From: Macrostomum hystrix | Lineage: Eukaryota > Animalia > Platyhelminthes | Direction: 5' to 3' | Length of the DNA stretch: 64,000 nucleotides | NCBI GenBank assembly: GCA_950097015.1 | Contig: CATNEN010000009.1 | Span: 930,001-994,000, forward strand | In this document: piece by piece, positions 14,062 to 22,465 of the stretch | Layout of the letters: every line of letters starts with the position of its first letter | How positions within the stretch are numbered: position 1 is the first letter of the stretch | Notes under the pieces: generated by a model | What the model was told of the DNA's origin: nothing | The model's database searches: none | Seen by the model: the letters and a program-made list of their open reading frames with translations, nothing else | Translations under genes and position numbers: made by a program

Positions 14062-16966
14062 TCAGTTCTCCCAGTACGGCCGGCGGCTTCTGGCCGCGCG
14101 AGCCTCGTCGGCTGCCTCGCCACCGTGCCACCGGCTGGTAGGGCCCGACGGCTCCTTGGGCTGCTCCGAGTCGTCGAAGAAGGTGTACTTTACCGGCCAC
14201 CAGCGCTTCCTGTGGGTTGGGAATGCGGCGGCGGTACAGAAAGAGCTTTGGGTTGGGACAGGGGGTTGGTGGCAGAGCGGTTAACGTGTCTGCCTCTCGC
14301 ACCAAGGTGTCTAAGCTCGATTCCACAGCGAGGCCCCATTAATTTGGGGAGCAGCCGCGGAGAGAAGGCTCGGGGCTTGTCGTGCAATTTACGCCCTTGA
14401 GGACCAACCTCCAAGGCACAGTGAAGTGTAAACTGCCTGTCGATAAGAAAGTCAGGACAGATATACACACTGGGTGATCGCGTGCCTGTGTACAGTATCT
14501 GTGTGCGTCTGTGCTCAGGGGTAAGCGAAATGGGGAGATGGGAAATGGTTGAGGAGGTGAAATCAGAATGGAAAGAGGGGAAGAAGAGAAAATAATGGGA
14601 AGTGAGTAAGTTGAGGTGGTGAAGTGAGAAGGGGGTGAGAATGGGAAGTGGAGAAGTGGAGATAAGAATGGGAAGTGGAGAAGTGGAGATAAGAATGGGA
14701 AGTGGAGAAGTGGAGATAAGAATGAGAAGTGGAGAAGTGGAGATAAGAATGGGAAGTGAAGAAGTGCAGATAAGAATGGGAAGAGGAGAAGGGGGTGAGA
14801 ATGGGAAGTGGAGAAGTGGAGATAAGAATGGGAAGTGGAGAAGTGGAGATAAGAATGGGAAGTGGAGAAGTGGAGATAAGAATGGGAAGTGAAGAAGTGC
14901 AGATAAGAATGGGAAGAGGAGAAGGGGGTGAGAATGGGAAGTGGAGAAGTGGAGATAAGAATGGGAAGTGGAGATAAGAATGGGAAGTGGAGAAGTGGAG
15001 ATAAGAATGGGAAGTGGAGATAAGAATGGGAAGAGGAGAAGGGGGTGAGAATGGGAAGTGGAGAAGTGGAGATAAGAATGGGAAGTGGAGAAGTGGAGAT
15101 AAGAATGGGAAGAGGAGAAGGGGTGAGAATGGGAAGTGGAGAAGTGAAGATAAGAATGGGAAGAGGAGAAGGGGGTGAGAATGGGAAGTGGAGAAGTGGA
15201 GATAAGAATGGGAAGTGGAGATTAGAATGGGAAGAGGAGAAGGGGGTGAGAATGGGAAGTGGAGAAGGGGAGATAAGAATGGGAAGAGGAGAAGGGGAGG
15301 TGAGAACTGAAGGGGGCATTAGAATGAGGGGTTTATGTGGGATGGGGCAATGAGAAGGGCTTTGAGAAGTGAATGAAAATGGGTTCAAGTAGCTGATGTA
15401 GCAGTAGCACCGACTGAAGTGCTTCGAATCGATGTCTCAGATGCAGAATGCAGTAAATGTGAGGCAGCTGCAATCTTCATCAGGGATGAGGGGGGGAAGG
15501 TATATCATGTGGTGTCAGCAGACAGTGGGCAAGACACAGCTGCTAATGTCCTCCCATTATCAACAGCGGTGCAGCCTGTGTGCGCCAGCAGGTTCCCATA
15601 TTTGCCAATAAATGTAGCTGAGCCAGCAGACCTGAGAGCACCTCGGAAACTCACGGGGATTGTGTAGCTGAGCCAGCAGACCTGAGAGCACCTCGGAAAC
15701 TCACGGGGATTGTGTAGCTGAGCCAGCAGACCTGAGAGCACCTCGGAAACTCACGGGGGATTGTGTAGCTGAGCCAGCAGACCTGAGAGCACCTCGGAAA
15801 CCCACGGGGATTGTGTAGCTGAGCCAGCAGACCTGAGAGCACCTCGGAAACTCACGGGGATTGTGTAGCTGAGCCAGCAGACCTGAGAGCACCTCGGAAA
15901 CTCACGGGGATTGTGTAGCTGAGCCAGCAGACCTGAGAGCACCTCGGAAGCTCACGGGGGATTGTGTAGCTGAGCCAGCAGACCTGAGAGCACCTCGGAA
16001 GCTCACGGGGATTGTGTAGCTGAGCCAGCAGACCTGAGAGCACCTCGGAAGCTCACGGGGATTGTGTAGCTGAGCCAGCAGACCTGAGAGCACCTCGGAA
16101 ACTCACGGGGGATTGTGTAGCTGAGCCAGCAGACCTGAGAGCACCTCGGAAACTCACGGGGATTGTGTAGCTGAGCCAGCAGACCTGAGAGCACCTCGGA
16201 AACCCACGGGGATTGTGTAGCTGAGCCAGCAGACCTGAGAGCACATCGGAAGCTCACGGGGATTGTGTAGCTGAGCCAGCAGACCTGAGAGCACCTCGGA
16301 AACTCACGGGGGATTGTGTAGCTGAGCCAGCAGACCTGAGAGCACCTCGGAAACTCACGGGGATTGTGTAGCTGAGCCAGCAGACCTGAGAGCACCTCGG
16401 AAACTCACGGGGATTGTGTAGCTGAGTGGTCTGGATATTGGAGACTTCAGCAGCTGCACCCCCAGCAACCGGGGCCGGCATTTGCCCAGCTGCGGACAGG
16501 GTCTGACGCTGCCCAGCCAACCTGCCAGGCAGCGGGGGCGAGCCACGCCTTCCTGAAATCCTTTCCAACTGACTGACAGGTAATGAGGCCTCGCGCCTCG
16601 GACTGGGGAGTCATCCGAACCGTTTGATCCCAAGCGTGCCCAAGGGAAAAGACTTCCTCAGGTAAAAACTCTTTGAAGTAGCCGAATGAGAAACATTCTA
16701 GCCACGGAATACTTAATTACTAATTAGTACACCTGCCTGTTGGACAAGGACTCACCCGTGAAGCCAGGGCTCGTCGTTCTCGGAGCCAAGAGCCGCTGGC
16801 AGGGCGTCAGCAGTCGGCAGTGCCAGAAGGCAGGCTGCAATGGGAGTTCGGGGAGGAAGGTCATGGCAGCAGTGTAGCCAGCTGTACAGGAAGGCTGGGT
16901 TCGTGGCCGAGACTCACTAGCCAGTTCTAGGGTGAGCAGGCAAGTCAGCAAGTGTAGTCGCGGCAT
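14062..16966 (-). CDS. Candidate multi-exon gene of unknown product
   Basis: Terminal exon 14209-14062 after CCCACAG reads KRWWPVKYTFFDDSEQPKEPSG...RPYWEN-stop. Upstream exon-like blocks at 16966-16757 (donor GTGAGT) and from about 16697 (CFSFGYFKEFLPEEVFSLGHAWDQ). Exact model unresolved. Confidence 0.35.
14261..14540 (+). mobile_element. tRNA-derived SINE, family A
   Basis: A-box GGTGGCAGAGCGG and B-box-like CTCGATTCC; inverted related copy at about 60700-60980, fragment at about 56263-56315. Confidence 0.7.
14590..15310. repeat. Purine-rich approx. 27-bp minisatellite (GAATGGGAAGTGGAGAAGTGGAGATAA)
   Basis: Tandem mosaic copies. Confidence 0.9.
15613..16425. repeat. 50/51-bp minisatellite
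   Basis: About 16 copies of TGTGTAGCTGAGCCAGCAGACCTGAGAGCACCTCGGAAACTCACGGGGAT. Confidence 0.97.
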
Positions 16967-17502
16967 GGTTCTCCTGAGTTGACTGCAGTGCTGAATGTTG
17001 ATGATCGGCTGGGGAGAAGGGAGGGCCTGACAGGGCTGCGGCGGGTCCGCTGACTTCATGGCTGCAAAGTCCGGTAGCAGCAAAGCTCCGATTGGCTGCT
17101 GGGCTGCCTGCCAATCAGAAGCCGCGCTAAGGCAGTTTGGGGATTCTGATCCCTTATCTTGAACTGCTCAACCATCCTTGAGTGCTCAAAGTATTCGTTA
17201 GTGGAAAAAATGAATAACAAACAGATCCAGGTGGGCCCGATGGCACAGTTGATGGATAGATTAGCAGAATCAGCCAGTATAACAATGCAGCAAGAAGTTA
17301 CCGATTTAATTTATTTATAGGCATCAGCACGGAAATGACAGATATTGTACACGCGGCTCACGGGGGGATTGGACAGAAAACTGTAGCAAAGGACACAGTA
17401 AAACATTTGCACTGAGTGAGCGCCTGCGAATGCGAACTCCCTAGCTCCCCCGCTGCAATAGGAAAAAATGGCTAAACCAGAGGGGCTGCGAGTCCTATGC
17501 GG

Positions 17503-18006
17503 TCAGGTGAAGTACGGCGGCCGCTGCACATTGATGCCGCACTCCTGGAAGGCCGGGCCAAGGTCCTCCATGGTCAGTGTCAGCCGCTTGCCTGAGGAGC
17601 CACCGCCTGCTGCCGCTGCGGCTGTACCGGCAGCACCGCCGATTGCAGCGGCGCCGGCAGCCGCGGAGCCTCCAGCAGTCGAGGCTGCTGAGCCGCCGCC
17701 GCTGAGCCGCTTGAGCACCGGGCCGCCCTGCCTGGCGCGGCAGTGGTGCATGGCGTCACTGACAATGTCAGAGATAAACTTCTGGCCGGCCAGGGAGACC
17801 AGGCGCAGCAAGCGCTGGTCCGTGACCTCCAGGCCGCTGCGCTCCAAGTAGTACTGGGTCACGCGGTCCGGAATGGTCGGCTGGTACTCGTCCAGCTGAA
17901 GGAAGAAGTCAGACAGAGACACTGGCTGCTGGAACTGTGGCCGTTGCTGCTGCTGCTGCTGGTCAGTCGGCTGCGCCGAGGCGGCCTGGAAGCTCTCGTC
18001 ACCGTT
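17503..18006 (-). CDS. TAF10: TFIID subunit 10 (no genomic ATG; starts at acceptor 18007)
   Basis: LDEYQPTIPDRVTQYYLERSG...RLVSLAGQKFISDIVSDAMHHC...LTLTMEDL...GINVQRPPYF matches the TAF10 histone fold. Confidence 0.93.
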   Translation of the reverse strand, partial: NGDESFQAASAQPTDQQQQQQRPQFQQPVSLSDFFLQLDEYQPTIPDRVTQYYLERSGLEVTDQRLLRLVSLAGQKFISDIVSDAMHHCRARQGGPVLKRLSGGGSAASTAGGSAAAGAAAIGGAAGTAAAAAGGGSSGKRLTLTMEDLGPAFQECGINVQRPPYFT

Positions 18007-18065
18007 CTGAAGGCGAGAGCGTTGGGGGCGAAGTACAACAATGAGAGTCGGGGAGCCGGTTAACA

Positions 18066-18430
18066 GGTGAACCAGGCGAAAGGGAAGATGGGACAGCCAG
18101 TGAGCCAGGTGAAAGGGAAGATGGGACAGCCAGTGAACCAGGTGAAAGGGAAGATGGGACAGCCAGTGAGCCAGGTGAAAGGGAAGATGGGACAGCCAGT
18201 GAGCCAGGTGAAAGGGAAGATGGGACAGCCAGTGAGCCAGGTGAAAGGGAAGATGGGACAGCCAGTGAGCCAGGTGAAAGGGAAGATGGGACAGCCAGTG
18301 AGCCAGGTGAAAGGGAAGATGGGACAGCCAGTGAACCAGGTGAAAGGGAAGATGGGACAGCCAGTGAGCCAGGTGAAAGGGAAGATGGGACAGCCAGTGA
18401 GCCAGGTGAAAGGGAAGATCGGACAGCCGG
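18066..18430. repeat. 33-bp minisatellite upstream of the TAF10 acceptor
   Basis: About 11 copies of GCCAGGTGAAAGGGAAGATGGGACAGCCAGTGA. Confidence 0.95.
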
Positions 18431-19046
18431 TAACCCAGAATTCGGCAGTCAGTCAGTCAGCAGGCTGAAGCTGCTTCAGAGACGTCATTGATGAGGCTGG
18501 CAGCAGATCCAGCTGAGAGCACTTCAGGAGGTGATGGTGGCCACAACCGCGGCTGCACTCATTTTGAGCACTGCTTAGCACAGGGGTCAAGGAACAAGCC
18601 AGATGGAATAAAGCAATAAGCTGAGTGGCCTCAGCCCCATTCAATTTGCAACTGCAGAAGCAGCAGAAGCAGCGGACCCCGCAGGTGACAGTTATGGTCA
18701 GTGGGAAGATGATAAATGATGACAGGTATGCAGGGCAATCTAAGCTGATAAATAAATTGAAAGGCCGGGCTTGAGCAGTGTTTGTGTGGCGATCCGTGCG
18801 AGCTCAGTTCTCACGTTTATTTCACCAGTCGGCGCGAAGCACAGTAAATGCGTCGGAGAGACTGGCAGGGCGGGTTTGGCCATAGACTTTTTAGTTAGGC
18901 ATCAAGGAAGATAAGACAAATTGTATATTATAAACGTACAAATACAAAGGGTCTCAGGGAAATCAATTTAACACGGAAAAAATGTTGTTGTGTGTTATGT
19001 TAAGTTTTGAAACATGGAAATCTGTACATAGCATCTATAGTTGCTA

Positions 19047-19200
19047 GGGGGCTGTAGCCTTGTGGTTAGGGCGAAGACTCGAAGGTTGGGGGTTCAATCC
19101 CTGACTCCAATAGAACTGTAAAATGGGTGCAATCATTAGATTGGGTAATTGAGGGTGGGTGCGGCGTCCCCCAGTCTATGGACTGAACAGCTGTACGTAG
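19047..19200 (+). mobile_element. tRNA-derived SINE, family B
   Basis: TAGCCTTGTGGTTAG and GGTTCAATCC boxes; 3' part GGGTGGGTG...CCCCAGTC(T)ATGGACTGAACAG shared with copies at 30350-30560 and 33435-33585. Confidence 0.65.
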
Positions 19201-19421
19201 ACTTTAGATCTGGCCTAATTGGGCAGGTGAAATCAATGCTAATAATTATCATAGATATAGTATAGATGCTATGCATAGATGCCCATGGTTTGGTTTAAAA
19301 GGATTTAGTGATTGACAGATAAATGGCAAGCCATGAGAAAAGCAGAAGACAAAGATCAGGCAGCGCAGGGATTCGGATTGGTAGCAATGGAAGTGTTTCA
19401 GCTGAGCGAAAGTCTGAGAGC

Positions 19422-21206
19422 TCAACCGAGGGCTCCGTCGGGCTTTCGCTTTGGCAAAGACGCGATGCCGAAGCCGGCGGTCCCGGCGCCTCCGCCGAAG
19501 CCTCCAAACAACGAGGGGACAGTGCCGGTGCCGCCTGCGGCTGGCGCAGCGGCCGAGAAAGCCGAGAAGCCACCGAAGCCGCCACCGCCGATGCCGCCGA
19601 AGAGGGAGGGCGCAACGGCGGCCGGCTGGGTGACGGAGGCTGCAGCGGCCGCGGTGGCGGCGGCAGCTGCGGCGGCGGCGAGCGAGTCGTCGCAGGGCGG
19701 CGGTCCAAAGCCGGAACGGCGACCCCCGCTAGAGGAGGCGGCGCGAGGCGCTGACTGCTCGGCAAAGTCAGCGAAAGGATTGCGGAAGTCGCCGCGAGCC
19801 CGCCGGTAGGCCAGGAAGTTGGCGCGGAGCCGGTCGCAGGCGGAGCACGTGGCGCCAAGCTCGGCGGCGCAGGCGACGAGAGCTTCGCGGGCCTGCCGAA
19901 GGGCGTTCAGGAGCTCCTGCCCGCTGACGCGACCGCCGGAGCCGTCCAGGCAGAGCGCCGCCTCGAGGTCCTCGATCTCCGCCTTGAGCAGCCGGATCTT
20001 CCCGCCCGCCTCCGTCACCAGCCGGCCTAGCAGCTCCAGCGCCTCCTGGCTCTCCGCCTGCTGCCAGGCGGGCAGCTCGAAGCTTCTGCGGGCCACGGAC
20101 AGCTGCTGGCCGAGCTCGGCCAGGTCGCCGCGAAGCCTGACCGCGGCGCCGATGCTGGCAGCTCGGCTGGTGGCCAGCCGCCTGACCGACTGCGCCACTG
20201 ACTCCGCCTCCTCCGCCACGCGGCCGAGCTCCTGCGCCAGGCCGGCCCGCTCCGCCTCCATGCGGGCGCGCAGCTCGCGCTGGGACGTCAGGTGCCGGCG
20301 GAACGCCTCCACGGTGGCCAGGACCTCGTGAGGGATCTCCGACTCCAAAACGCTTTTCACCTCAGCGGCGCCCGAGCTGCCAGCCGTTCCGCCTGCGCCG
20401 CCGATGCCGAAGCCGCTGACGCCAGCTGCACCACTGCCGGCGGCACCACCAATTCCGCCTCCGACGCCTCCGCCAGGCAGGCTCGAACCCGGGACGCCGC
20501 CAAGTCCTCTGAATGCGGTCGCAGCTGCTGGAGCTGCCGCCGCCACCGCCAATCCGGCAGTCGCCGGGGTGCCCCCGGCAGTCGTTACCAAGGCGCCGAA
20601 AGAGAAATTGCCTGAGCCGAGTCCCGGAGCTGCGTTGGCAGCCGGCGCGGTCCCGAAGGACAGGCCGAGTGGCGGCTTGGCAGCCGGAGCTGCCATGGAG
20701 AACGTCGTAGTGGACGACAGATTCAGCCCGCCAATCGTTGACGACTGCGTTGCGGCTGGCGCGGTGGCTCCGCCGGGGGCTTTGCTGGCGGAGTTGGCCG
20801 CTGCGCCGAGGCCGAGGCCGAATGCGGGCGCTGCCGGCTTAGCCGCGGCCGCAGCGGGGGAGGCGCTAAAGCCAAAAGCTGACTGCTGCTGTTGCTGCTG
20901 CTGACCGGCGGTTGCCGCGTTCGGAGCGAAAGAGAAAGGCGTTGTTGACGACAGGTTGAGGCCAACGATGGTGGAGGATTGGCCGGCCGCTGCGGAGCCT
21001 CCGGCAGCTCCCGGCGTCCCGCTGGCAGCCGCTACTGAGGCTGCATCGGCAGCTCCGGTACCAGCGGTGCCAAACGCCGTCTGCGGTGGCACGGATAAGT
21101 TGAGGCTGCCCAGAGTGCTGGAACTGCCGGCGCTGCTCAGCGGAGCGACTGCGGCCAGCTTGGGGCCCGCCTGGCTGGCGCCGAATGCGAAGCCGGTGCT
21201 AGCCAT
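19422..21206 (-). CDS. NUP58: FG nucleoporin p58/p45
   Basis: FG-rich N- and C-termini; central coiled coil (KSVLESEIPHEVLATVEAFRRHL...LRANFLAYRRARGDFRNPF) resembles NUP58; single exon. Confidence 0.85.
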   Translation of the reverse strand: MASTGFAFGASQAGPKLAAVAPLSSAGSSSTLGSLNLSVPPQTAFGTAGTGAADAASVAAASGTPGAAGGSAAAGQSSTIVGLNLSSTTPFSFAPNAATAGQQQQQQQSAFGFSASPAAAAAKPAAPAFGLGLGAAANSASKAPGGATAPAATQSSTIGGLNLSSTTTFSMAAPAAKPPLGLSFGTAPAANAAPGLGSGNFSFGALVTTAGGTPATAGLAVAAAAPAAATAFRGLGGVPGSSLPGGGVGGGIGGAAGSGAAGVSGFGIGGAGGTAGSSGAAEVKSVLESEIPHEVLATVEAFRRHLTSQRELRARMEAERAGLAQELGRVAEEAESVAQSVRRLATSRAASIGAAVRLRGDLAELGQQLSVARRSFELPAWQQAESQEALELLGRLVTEAGGKIRLLKAEIEDLEAALCLDGSGGRVSGQELLNALRQAREALVACAAELGATCSACDRLRANFLAYRRARGDFRNPFADFAEQSAPRAASSSGGRRSGFGPPPCDDSLAAAAAAAATAAAAASVTQPAAVAPSLFGGIGGGGFGGFSAFSAAAPAAGGTGTVPSLFGGFGGGAGTAGFGIASLPKRKPDGALG

Positions 21207-21596
21207 GCTGGCACTCGGATGTCACTCTATGAACTGGCTGAGAAGTCACTCGGATTTCACTCTCGGGACTAGCTGAGAAGACACTGGGAAGTCACTCTGT
21301 TGCGCCGAGCTAAAATGGATGGAGACATTGTCAAGTGGTAGCCTGCAAAAAAGACAGCAGACCATGAGACAGGAGGCAATGTCACAGCCAAAGAAAAACT
21401 CAAGCAGTCCAACACCCATTTTAGAGAAATTCAAAGACAAAAAAACGAAAGTTTTAGAGGCCCATTAAAGATATTATTATGTATTTATAGCAGTCTAGCA
21501 GGCAATTTAAGAGCAAAATAATTGTTATTAATTTACTGTAAAAACATTTGGGCCACAGACCATGTGCAACTGACATTGAGAAGACAGTCTGTGTCA

Positions 21597-21870
21597 GGAG
21601 GCAGTGGGATGAGAGGCTGGAGGCAGTGGGATGAGAGGCTGGAGGCAGTGGGATCAGAGGCTGGAGGCAGTGGGATCAGAGGCTGGAGGCAGTGGGATCA
21701 GAGGCTGGAGGCAGTGGGATGAGAGGCTGGAGGCAGTGGGATCAGAGGCTGGAGGCAGTGGGATCAGAGGCTGGAGGCAGTGGGATCAGAGGCTGGAGGC
21801 AGTGGGATTAGAGGCTGGAGGCAGTGGGATGAGAGGCTGGAGGCAGTGGAATGAGAGGCTAGAGGCATTG
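21597..21870. repeat. 22-bp minisatellite GAGGCTGGAGGCAGTGGGATCA
   Basis: About 12 copies between CWC25 and NUP58. Confidence 0.95.
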
Positions 21871-22465
21871 AGGATGAGAGGAAGGAGGCAGTGAGGTTAG
21901 ATAAGCATAAGCAGACTCAGGAAGAAGACACAACGTATAGCAAAATTGCAACAGATAAGTTATCAATAAAGCACAGGACAAACGTAGGCAGCATTGCCAC
22001 AGGACATGATGAGGCCGCACAGCTACTCAGCCGGTGCCATAAAAAACTGAGACAATTGATATTTGGCTCCGAGCTGTGACAGCAGGAAGTGTATGAATGC
22101 TGCCGTGACAGTCATGCTCAGTGGAGCGACATGTGAGGACACTGATATTACCTATCAGCTAGTGGGTTGCCAGGAGCTTCTGATGTGTCAAAATCGGCGC
22201 CTGAGTTCTCCCAAATATTTTCATAAGCTTGGCTTAAAAAATGCAAATATGAGGCGCGGGATTTGGCCCCGCTGCCTCTCGCTTCAGAATAACGGGATTG
22301 GGAAAGCTGGGCAAACATTCACGGATTTGATGCTGAGTGCATAGGAATCAAATGGGGCGGCTGGGACAGCAGCTGCGGCAACCCGCAAGGCAGAACTGGG
22401 GCAGCAGCAGTCCGTGGGTCAGTGAAGTCGGGCAAGTCAGCAAAGCCCTAAGCGACTTTCACGAT

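What the first reader, a model, noticed from the sequence alone, without database searches (positions are those of the whole stretch)
17503..18460. TAF10 has no start codon of its own and begins at a phase-0 acceptor (candidate SL-donated AUG)
Seen: in the TAF10 frame there is a stop near 18458, then no ATG until DAMHHC, deep in the histone fold. The acceptor GCTCTCGCCTTCAG (ends 18007) is followed in phase 0 by NGDESFQAASAQ. Established: flatworm spliced leaders end in a conserved AUG that can initiate translation (shown in Schistosoma). Inference: the mRNA is SL-AUG + exon, giving MNGDESFQ..., so a core TFIID subunit would depend on trans-splicing for its start codon.
Basis: partly seen in the sequence, partly recalled or inferred. 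Interest (0 to 1): 0.8.

Follow-up and report, generated by a model that had tools for sequence, protein, structure and literature searches.

The report
Spliced leader supplies TAF10 start codon
In this Macrostomum flatworm the gene for the core transcription factor TAF10 has no start codon of its own; transcript assemblies show the trans-spliced leader, which ends in AUG, joined in frame to the gene's single coding exon, a mechanism already known in flatworms.

Summary

- **The gene.** On the minus strand, one exon (18006..17503) encodes a complete TAF10 histone-fold protein. It follows an AG acceptor at 18008-18007. There is no in-frame ATG between the stop at 18459-18457 and Met86, which lies inside the fold.
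- **The transcript evidence.** Assembled contigs from three public runs in two studies cover 17254..18007. They then continue with 11-25 letters that equal the 3' end of the published Macrostomum lignano spliced leader (...CTCAATTTATTGCATG). The mRNA therefore reads SL-AUG|AAC GGU GAC, giving MNGDESFQ... as a 168-codon open frame.
- **Conservation.** M. lignano is a diverged relative (TAF10 coding DNA 79% identical). It keeps the same upstream neighbour (an FG nucleoporin gene), the same phase-0 acceptor (CAG|AACGGTGACGAGAGC) and the same lack of an ATG. Its two gene models are labelled "partial". Similarity begins at the acceptor, the indels in the N-terminal tail are multiples of three, and no upstream exon is conserved.
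- **What is not shown.** Translation from the leader AUG is inferred. The precedent is Schistosoma mansoni (Cheng et al. 2006, read only through citing papers).
- **Verdict.** This is a new, well-supported member of a known kind. An earlier follow-up in this scan (s1-316733) reported the same mechanism for other genes of this genome. Interest is modest.

The parts
17503..18006 (-). Single TAF10 coding exon: 167 codons plus a TGA stop, with no ATG of its own upstream of Met86
   Evidence: Sequence and frame. Pfam PF03540 at 2e-34 over the full profile. Covered by transcript contigs with 0 differences in X5 and X6.
18007..18020 (-). Trans-splice acceptor: pyrimidine-rich tract gctctcgccttc followed by AG (18008-18007). 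The leader is joined between 18007 and 18006.
   Evidence: One search gives the sequence. In one search the loose ends start behind 18007 in three runs. The G at 18007 coincides with the last G of the leader, so the laid match runs one base past the true junction.
17254..17502 (-). 3' untranslated region, as far as the transcript contigs reach. AATAAA lies at about 17316-17311.
   Evidence: Contigs of X5 and X6 end at 17257 and 17254. Contig ends are not proven RNA ends.
18067..18428 (.). Minisatellite of 33-bp units, 11 copies, in the segment removed by trans-splicing (the outron). It is 76% pyrimidine on the sense strand.
   Evidence: It is absent from the transcript contigs.
19422..21206 (-). 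Upstream same-strand neighbour, an FG-repeat nucleoporin gene (context only). Its stop lies 1,414 nt before the TAF10 acceptor.
   Evidence: ORF. Pfam Nucleoporin_FG2 at 4.6e-13. The same neighbour sits upstream of TAF10 in both M. lignano loci.

Best explanation
TAF10 of this Macrostomum flatworm is made from an mRNA whose 5' end is the trans-spliced leader. The primary transcript may start at a promoter of its own or continue from the upstream nucleoporin gene. It is cut at the AG at 18008-18007, and the leader exon of the SL RNA, encoded elsewhere in the genome, is ligated to base 18006. The leader ends in AUG, and this AUG lies in frame directly before AAC GGU GAC, so the 168-residue protein MNGDESFQ...PPYFT starts at the leader's AUG. 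The gene itself carries no usable initiation codon.

Shown: the gene anatomy, the leader-exon junction in assembled transcripts, and the same anatomy in M. lignano.

Inferred: that ribosomes initiate at the leader AUG, and that no other isoform supplies a start.
For: 1; contigs of 776, 778 and 502 nt from X5, X6 (study P2) and X1 (study P1) end on the exon at 18007. They run on with 25, 24 and 11 letters identical to the 3' part of the M. lignano leader CGGTCTCTTACTGCGAAGACTCAATTTATTGCATG (PMC8629364).
2; the window holds no copy of that leader with up to 3 mismatches, so the join is not a local cis-splice.
3; the leader ATG plus the exon is one open frame of 168 codons. The next ATG in any frame is 255 nt downstream, inside the histone fold.
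4; the Pfam domain starts at residue 31, so initiation must lie within or before the first 30 codons.
5; the two M. lignano TAF10 models are labelled 'partial' by the source. Locus L001 has ttgCAG|AACGGTGACGAGAGC in phase 0 and no in-frame ATG in the 127 codons upstream.
6; similarity between the species begins at the acceptor, the intergenic region shows none, and the indels in the N-terminal tail are 6+6 nt, so the frame from the acceptor is kept.
7. Literature: the terminal AUG is conserved in flatworm leaders and can serve as a start codon. Cheng et al. [quoted passage not shown] PMC10468722 notes that the Macrostomum leader likely contains the final ATG as a start codon.
Against: - All RNA evidence consists of assembled contigs from runs whose type is not on record as RNA. 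Contigs give no abundance, drop rare variants and cannot exclude a cis-spliced isoform.
- No ribosome or peptide data were available.
- Two in-frame near-cognate codons (GTG at codon 29, CTG at codon 31) lie just before the domain and could in principle initiate.
- The second M. lignano copy (L002) has CTG instead of CAG at the acceptor, so not every copy keeps the site.
Confidence: 0.85

Rival explanations
1. A small cis-spliced upstream exon in the 1.4-kb interval supplies the ATG. The leader-joined form would then be only one isoform, or a processing by-product.
For: One search lists ten theoretical ATG...GT phase-0 exons between 19421 and 18008. One has a good donor: ATG at 18883, then AAC|GTGAGA at 18816/18815. 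PMC12582326 reports that parasitic flatworms often share acceptors between cis- and trans-splicing. An earlier follow-up on this genome (s1-316733) found one claimed case that did have a tiny upstream ATG exon.
Against: No contig in four runs shows such a join, and all three contigs that reach the acceptor carry the leader. The interval has no detectable similarity to M. lignano, so no upstream exon is conserved. The M. lignano models are annotated 5'-partial rather than with an upstream exon.
Confidence: 0.06
2. The mRNA is trans-spliced, but translation starts elsewhere: at the near-cognate GTG (codon 29) or CTG (codon 31), or at Met86. The in-frame leader AUG would then be a one-in-three coincidence.
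For: Phase 0 has a prior chance of one in three. The leader AUG is in frame in about 28% of S. mansoni trans-spliced transcripts, which is roughly chance. GTG29 and CTG31 precede the Pfam domain start.
Against: A scanning ribosome meets the leader AUG first, and that AUG is in frame with no stop. Starting at Met86 would delete the first half of the histone fold. The tail between the acceptor and the domain keeps its frame across species through indels in multiples of three, and residues NGDES and QQQQRPQFQQPV are shared. That pattern is expected of translated sequence.
Confidence: 0.06
3. The leader-bearing contigs come from another locus, either a paralogue or a processed retrocopy present in DNA, and not from this gene's mRNA.
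For: The run types are not on record. M. lignano is a hidden polyploid with duplicated genes (PMC10468722).
Against: The X5 and X6 contigs match the window with 0 differences over about 750 nt and stop being collinear exactly at the AG acceptor. They are short, transcript-sized records in assemblies of 39-50 Mb. Even if they came from a paralogue, the mechanism would be the same.
Confidence: 0.03

Closest known systems
[quoted passage not shown]
   Same: The leader ends in AUG, is ligated at an AG acceptor directly in frame with a conserved ORF, and the recipient gene has no ATG of its own.
   Different: The species is a free-living macrostomid, not a parasite. The gene is a core TFIID/SAGA subunit. 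Translation from the leader AUG was tested experimentally in S. mansoni but not here.
Macrostomum lignano SL trans-splicing and operons (Wudarski et al. 2017, PMC5730564; Ustyantsev and Berezikov 2021, PMC8629364)
   Same: The leader 3' sequence is identical over the 26 nt seen. A same-strand upstream gene and a repeat-filled intergenic interval are present, as those authors describe for operons.
   Different: Those studies trimmed the leader before mapping and did not analyse leader-donated start codons. As a result the M. lignano TAF10 models are deposited as 'partial'. The window comes from a diverged relative, not from the Mlig_3_7 assembly.
TAF10 (Pfam PF03540), the histone-fold subunit shared by TFIID and SAGA
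   Same: The full-length domain matches, with the invariant LTMEDL and GQKFISDI motifs shared with mammalian TAF10.
   Different: The N-terminal tail is short and Gln-rich, and a long Gly/Ala-rich loop is inserted in the fold. The start codon is not encoded at the locus.

Membership tests
Leader-donated initiator AUG (flatworm slORF) | The organism's spliced leader ends in AUG | tested here: met
   The loose-end letters end in ...TTGCAT plus the G at 18007. They are identical to the end of the published M. lignano leader.
Leader-donated initiator AUG (flatworm slORF) | The leader is joined to the gene at an AG acceptor in RNA | tested here: met
   Three contigs from two studies break collinearity exactly at 18007/18006 and continue as leader. 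Caveat: these are assembled contigs, not raw reads.
Leader-donated initiator AUG (flatworm slORF) | The leader AUG is in frame with the conserved ORF, with no intervening stop | tested here: met
   A 168-codon open frame runs from the leader ATG to the TGA at 17505-17503.
Leader-donated initiator AUG (flatworm slORF) | No genomic in-frame ATG is able to start a complete protein | tested here: met
   There is no ATG between the stop at 18459-18457 and Met86. The domain starts at residue 31. The same holds in M. lignano locus L001.
Leader-donated initiator AUG (flatworm slORF) | Ribosomes initiate at the leader AUG | not testable with these tools
   This needs ribosome profiling, N-terminal proteomics or a reporter assay.
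TAF10 (PF03540) | Full-length match above the curated cut-off | tested here: met
   118.2 bits against a cut-off of 28, covering profile positions 1-102 of 102.
Downstream gene of an SL-resolved operon (criterion of PMC8629364) | Same-strand upstream gene and a trans-spliced downstream gene, with a repeat-adjusted intergenic distance under 1 kb | tested here: inconclusive
   The upstream stop to the acceptor is 1,414 nt, or 1,052 nt without the 362-nt minisatellite. The poly(A) site of the upstream gene is unknown. In M. lignano L001 the figures are 906 nt and about 555 nt without its repeat. No polycistronic precursor was sought.

The most novel reading that the evidence does not exclude
TAF10, a subunit shared by TFIID and SAGA, lost its own initiation codon before this species and M. 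lignano diverged (coding DNA about 70-79% identical). Throughout this Macrostomum lineage it has since depended wholly on SL trans-splicing for translation. Basal transcription machinery would then be hard-wired to the trans-splicing machinery, possibly as part of the reported enrichment of trans-splicing among conserved and stem-cell genes.
Probability: 0.55. Interest if true: 0.4.

Novelty: new member of a known kind. Interest (0 to 1): 0.3.

Why it matters
**Annotation.** Pipelines that trim the leader, including its ATG, leave such genes as "partial" or wrongly truncated. That has happened to both M. lignano TAF10 models. Adding the leader ATG back at mapped trans-splice sites would repair a whole class of gene models in Macrostomum genomes.

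**Biology.** An essential general transcription factor can be wholly dependent on trans-splicing for its start codon, and the arrangement is kept between two diverged species. Because the mechanism has been known in flatworms since 2006, a specialist would not be surprised.

Tried and rejected
1. **Local copy of the leader.** A search of the window with up to 3 mismatches found none, so the join is not a cis-splice within 64 kb.
2. **Theoretical cis exons.** Ten ATG...GT phase-0 candidates exist. None is seen in contigs or conserved.
3. **"Frozen" first five codons.** The first five codons after the junction are 15/15 nt identical to M. lignano. Third-position identity at conserved residues is 0.70, and seven runs of at least 5 identical codons occur in the gene. 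This is not beyond chance, so I make no claim from it.
4. **ATG-free first 255 nt.** About 7% of shuffles also lack an ATG, so the signal is weak.
5. **More Macrostomum or flatworm TAF10 proteins.** A word search restricted to the histone fold found only the two M. lignano proteins. Wider conservation could not be assessed.
6. **Known RNAs nearby.** Rfam (16000-22000) and ARAGORN (16000-21500) found nothing.
7. **Literature access.** The supplement of PMC8629364 and the Cheng et al. 2006 paper are not held. Cheng et al. is cited only through papers that cite it.
8. **Minisatellite homology.** The two species' minisatellite units are no more alike than shuffled units.

Full report
**Observation.** I read the minus strand of 17000-19500 and translated the TAF10 frame from 18468 to 17503.
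- The frame has a TGA at 18459-18457. It then reads through a repetitive stretch and reaches ...gctctcgccttcAG, with the AG at 18008-18007.
- It continues from 18006 as NGDESFQAASAQPTDQQQQQQRPQFQQPVSLSDFF... to a TGA at 17505-17503.
- The first in-frame ATG after the upstream stop is Met86, at 17751-17749, in SDAMHHC.
- The 167 residues from 18006 match Pfam TAF10 (PF03540) at 2e-34. The match covers the whole profile at residues 31-166, so Met86 lies in the middle of the histone fold.
- The repetitive stretch is a minisatellite of 33-bp units, 11 copies, at 18067-18428.
- The next gene upstream on the same strand (21206..19422) is an FG-repeat nucleoporin.

**Is it more than chance?** An acceptor in phase 0 has a one-in-three prior. 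The lack of any ATG in the first 255 nt of the exon is matched by about 7% of shuffles. The sequence alone is therefore suggestive at most, and the case rests on RNA and on comparison with a relative.

**RNA evidence.** The look-up of sequencing runs listed eight runs holding the stretch, from two studies. None is on record as RNA, and all are kept as Logan contigs. I laid four of them on 17100-18066, deliberately stopping short of the minisatellite.
- X5 gave one contig of 776 nt and X6 one of 778 nt. They cover 17257/17254..18007 with no differences from the window.
- X1, from another study and coded as another organism, gave a 502-nt contig covering 17520..18007. It has three substitutions and one in-frame 3-nt insertion at 17947.
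- All three contigs stop being collinear at 18007. They continue with loose letters that read, in mRNA sense, ACTGCGAAGACTCAATTTATTGCAT (25, 24 and 11 letters respectively).
- Together with the G at 18007, which the leader's final G and the acceptor's G share, this equals the last 26 nt of the 35-nt M. lignano spliced leader CGGTCTCTTACTGCGAAGACTCAATTTATTGCATG printed in PMC8629364.
- The window contains no copy of that sequence, even with three mismatches.
- The fourth run, X2, gave a contig that does not reach the junction.

The mature mRNA is therefore leader-AUG|AAC GGU GAC GAG. The leader ATG opens a 168-codon frame ending at the TAF10 stop.

**Limits of the RNA evidence.** Contigs show that the molecule exists. 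They do not show its abundance, its true ends, or the absence of rarer isoforms.

**Comparison with M. lignano.** A word-based protein search found two M. lignano proteins, BOX15_Mlig027959g1 and BOX15_Mlig011002g2. The source labels both "partial", and both begin without Met, at (L)SPAEQQ.... I fetched their loci as L001 and L002 from GCA_002269645.1.
- Both loci have the same order of genes: a Nucleoporin_FG2 gene, then TAF10 about 0.9 kb downstream.
- L001 has ...gacgcttgCAG|AACGGTGACGAGAGCCTC... with the exon starting at 2983 in phase 0. No in-frame ATG occurs in the 127 codons upstream.
- The nearest upstream ATG in L001, at 2946, is out of frame.
- Alignment A2 and blastn give 70.7% identity in the nucleoporin coding DNA and 79% in TAF10.
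- The intergenic interval shows no detectable similarity. Similarity begins at the acceptor.
- The N-terminal tail differs by two 6-nt indels, so the frame from the acceptor onward is kept.

From this I conclude that no upstream coding exon is conserved, that the segment between the acceptor and the histone fold behaves as coding sequence, and that the ATG-less arrangement predates the split of the two species. The 5'-partial label fits the way that genome was annotated. Leader sequences were trimmed from reads and transcripts before mapping, and ORFs were then called with TransDecoder (PMC5730564).

**Which organism.** The window is not from the Mlig_3_7 assembly, given 70-79% coding identity. 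It does share the M. lignano leader 3' end and the local gene order, so it is a Macrostomum-type flatworm. Earlier notes of this scan say the same. The run and organism names were coded, so I do not name the species.

**Mechanism.** Shown: the gene anatomy, the leader-exon junction, and conservation of the anatomy. Inferred: initiation at the leader AUG. The inference rests on four points.
- The leader AUG is the first AUG a scanning ribosome meets.
- It is in frame with no stop before the TAF10 stop codon.
- No other AUG could give a complete domain.
- There is a precedent in Schistosoma mansoni. Cheng et al. 2006 was not held in the library, so I use it as reported by PMC9851317, PMC12582326 and PMC5832876. 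The terminal AUG is conserved in all reported flatworm leaders, is in frame in 28% of trans-spliced S. mansoni transcripts, and is required by more than 40 cDNAs. For Macrostomum, PMC10468722 remarks that the leader likely contains the final ATG as a start codon.

**Rivals.**
- **A cis-spliced 5' exon.** Ten ATG...GT phase-0 candidates exist on paper, the best being 18883..18816 with donor GTGAGA. None appears in contigs and none is conserved.
- **Initiation at near-cognate GTG29 or CTG31, or at Met86.** This cannot be excluded without translation data. The upstream in-frame AUG and the frame-preserving evolution of the tail argue against it.
- **Contigs from a paralogue or retrocopy.** This is unlikely given 0 differences over about 750 nt and a break exactly at the AG.

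**Operon question.**
- The stop-to-acceptor distance is 1,414 nt, or 1,052 nt without the minisatellite.
- In M. lignano the distance is 906 nt, or about 555 nt without its own minisatellite.
- By the repeat-adjusted 1-kb rule of PMC8629364, the M. lignano pair would qualify and this one is borderline.
- I did not test for a polycistronic precursor, so this stays open.

**Comparison with what is known, and novelty.** The mechanism is the leader-donated initiator AUG of flatworms, known since 2006.
- No paper in the searched library pairs TAF10 with trans-splicing.
- The Macrostomum trans-splicing papers did not analyse leader-donated starts.
- This is therefore a new, well-documented member of a known kind.
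- An earlier follow-up of this scan reached the same reading for two other genes of this genome (s1-316733). That is not independent evidence for TAF10.

**Scores.** Confidence is about 0.95 that the mRNA is leader-joined in frame, and about 0.85 that the leader AUG is the functional start. Interest is 0.3.

Noticed in passing
window 18067-18428; L001 2597-2947: In both species a minisatellite of about 350 nt ends 35-60 nt upstream of the TAF10 trans-splice acceptor: 33-bp units x 11 here, 28-bp units x 12.6 in M. lignano. The units are unrelated in sequence, scoring no better than shuffled units. Both are pyrimidine-rich on the sense strand (0.76 and 0.71). This could be coincidence, a general property of Macrostomum outrons and intergenic spacers, or an element that aids trans-splicing.
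   Followed up: partly
L002 2983-2985: The second M. lignano TAF10 copy has CTG where L001 and the window have the CAG acceptor. It also has TISD instead of TIPD in the fold and lacks about 30 residues of the Gly/Ala loop. This may be a decaying duplicate, an assembly error, or a copy that uses the in-phase CAGCAGCAG acceptors 24-30 nt upstream.
   Followed up: partly
window 19040-19200 (-): A tRNA-like stretch is visible (on the + strand, ...GGGGGCTGTAGCCTTGTGGTTAGGGCGAAGACTCGAAGGTTGGGGGTTCAATCCCTGACTCC...). It lies in the spacer between the nucleoporin gene and TAF10. ARAGORN and Rfam do not call it, so it is possibly a tRNA-derived SINE.
   Followed up: partly
window 17947: The contig of run X1 (another study, coded as another organism) carries an in-frame 3-nt insertion in the CAG run of the N-terminal tail, plus three substitutions. 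It has the same leader junction, so it is an allele, a homeologue or a near relative.
   Followed up: no
   Followed up: no
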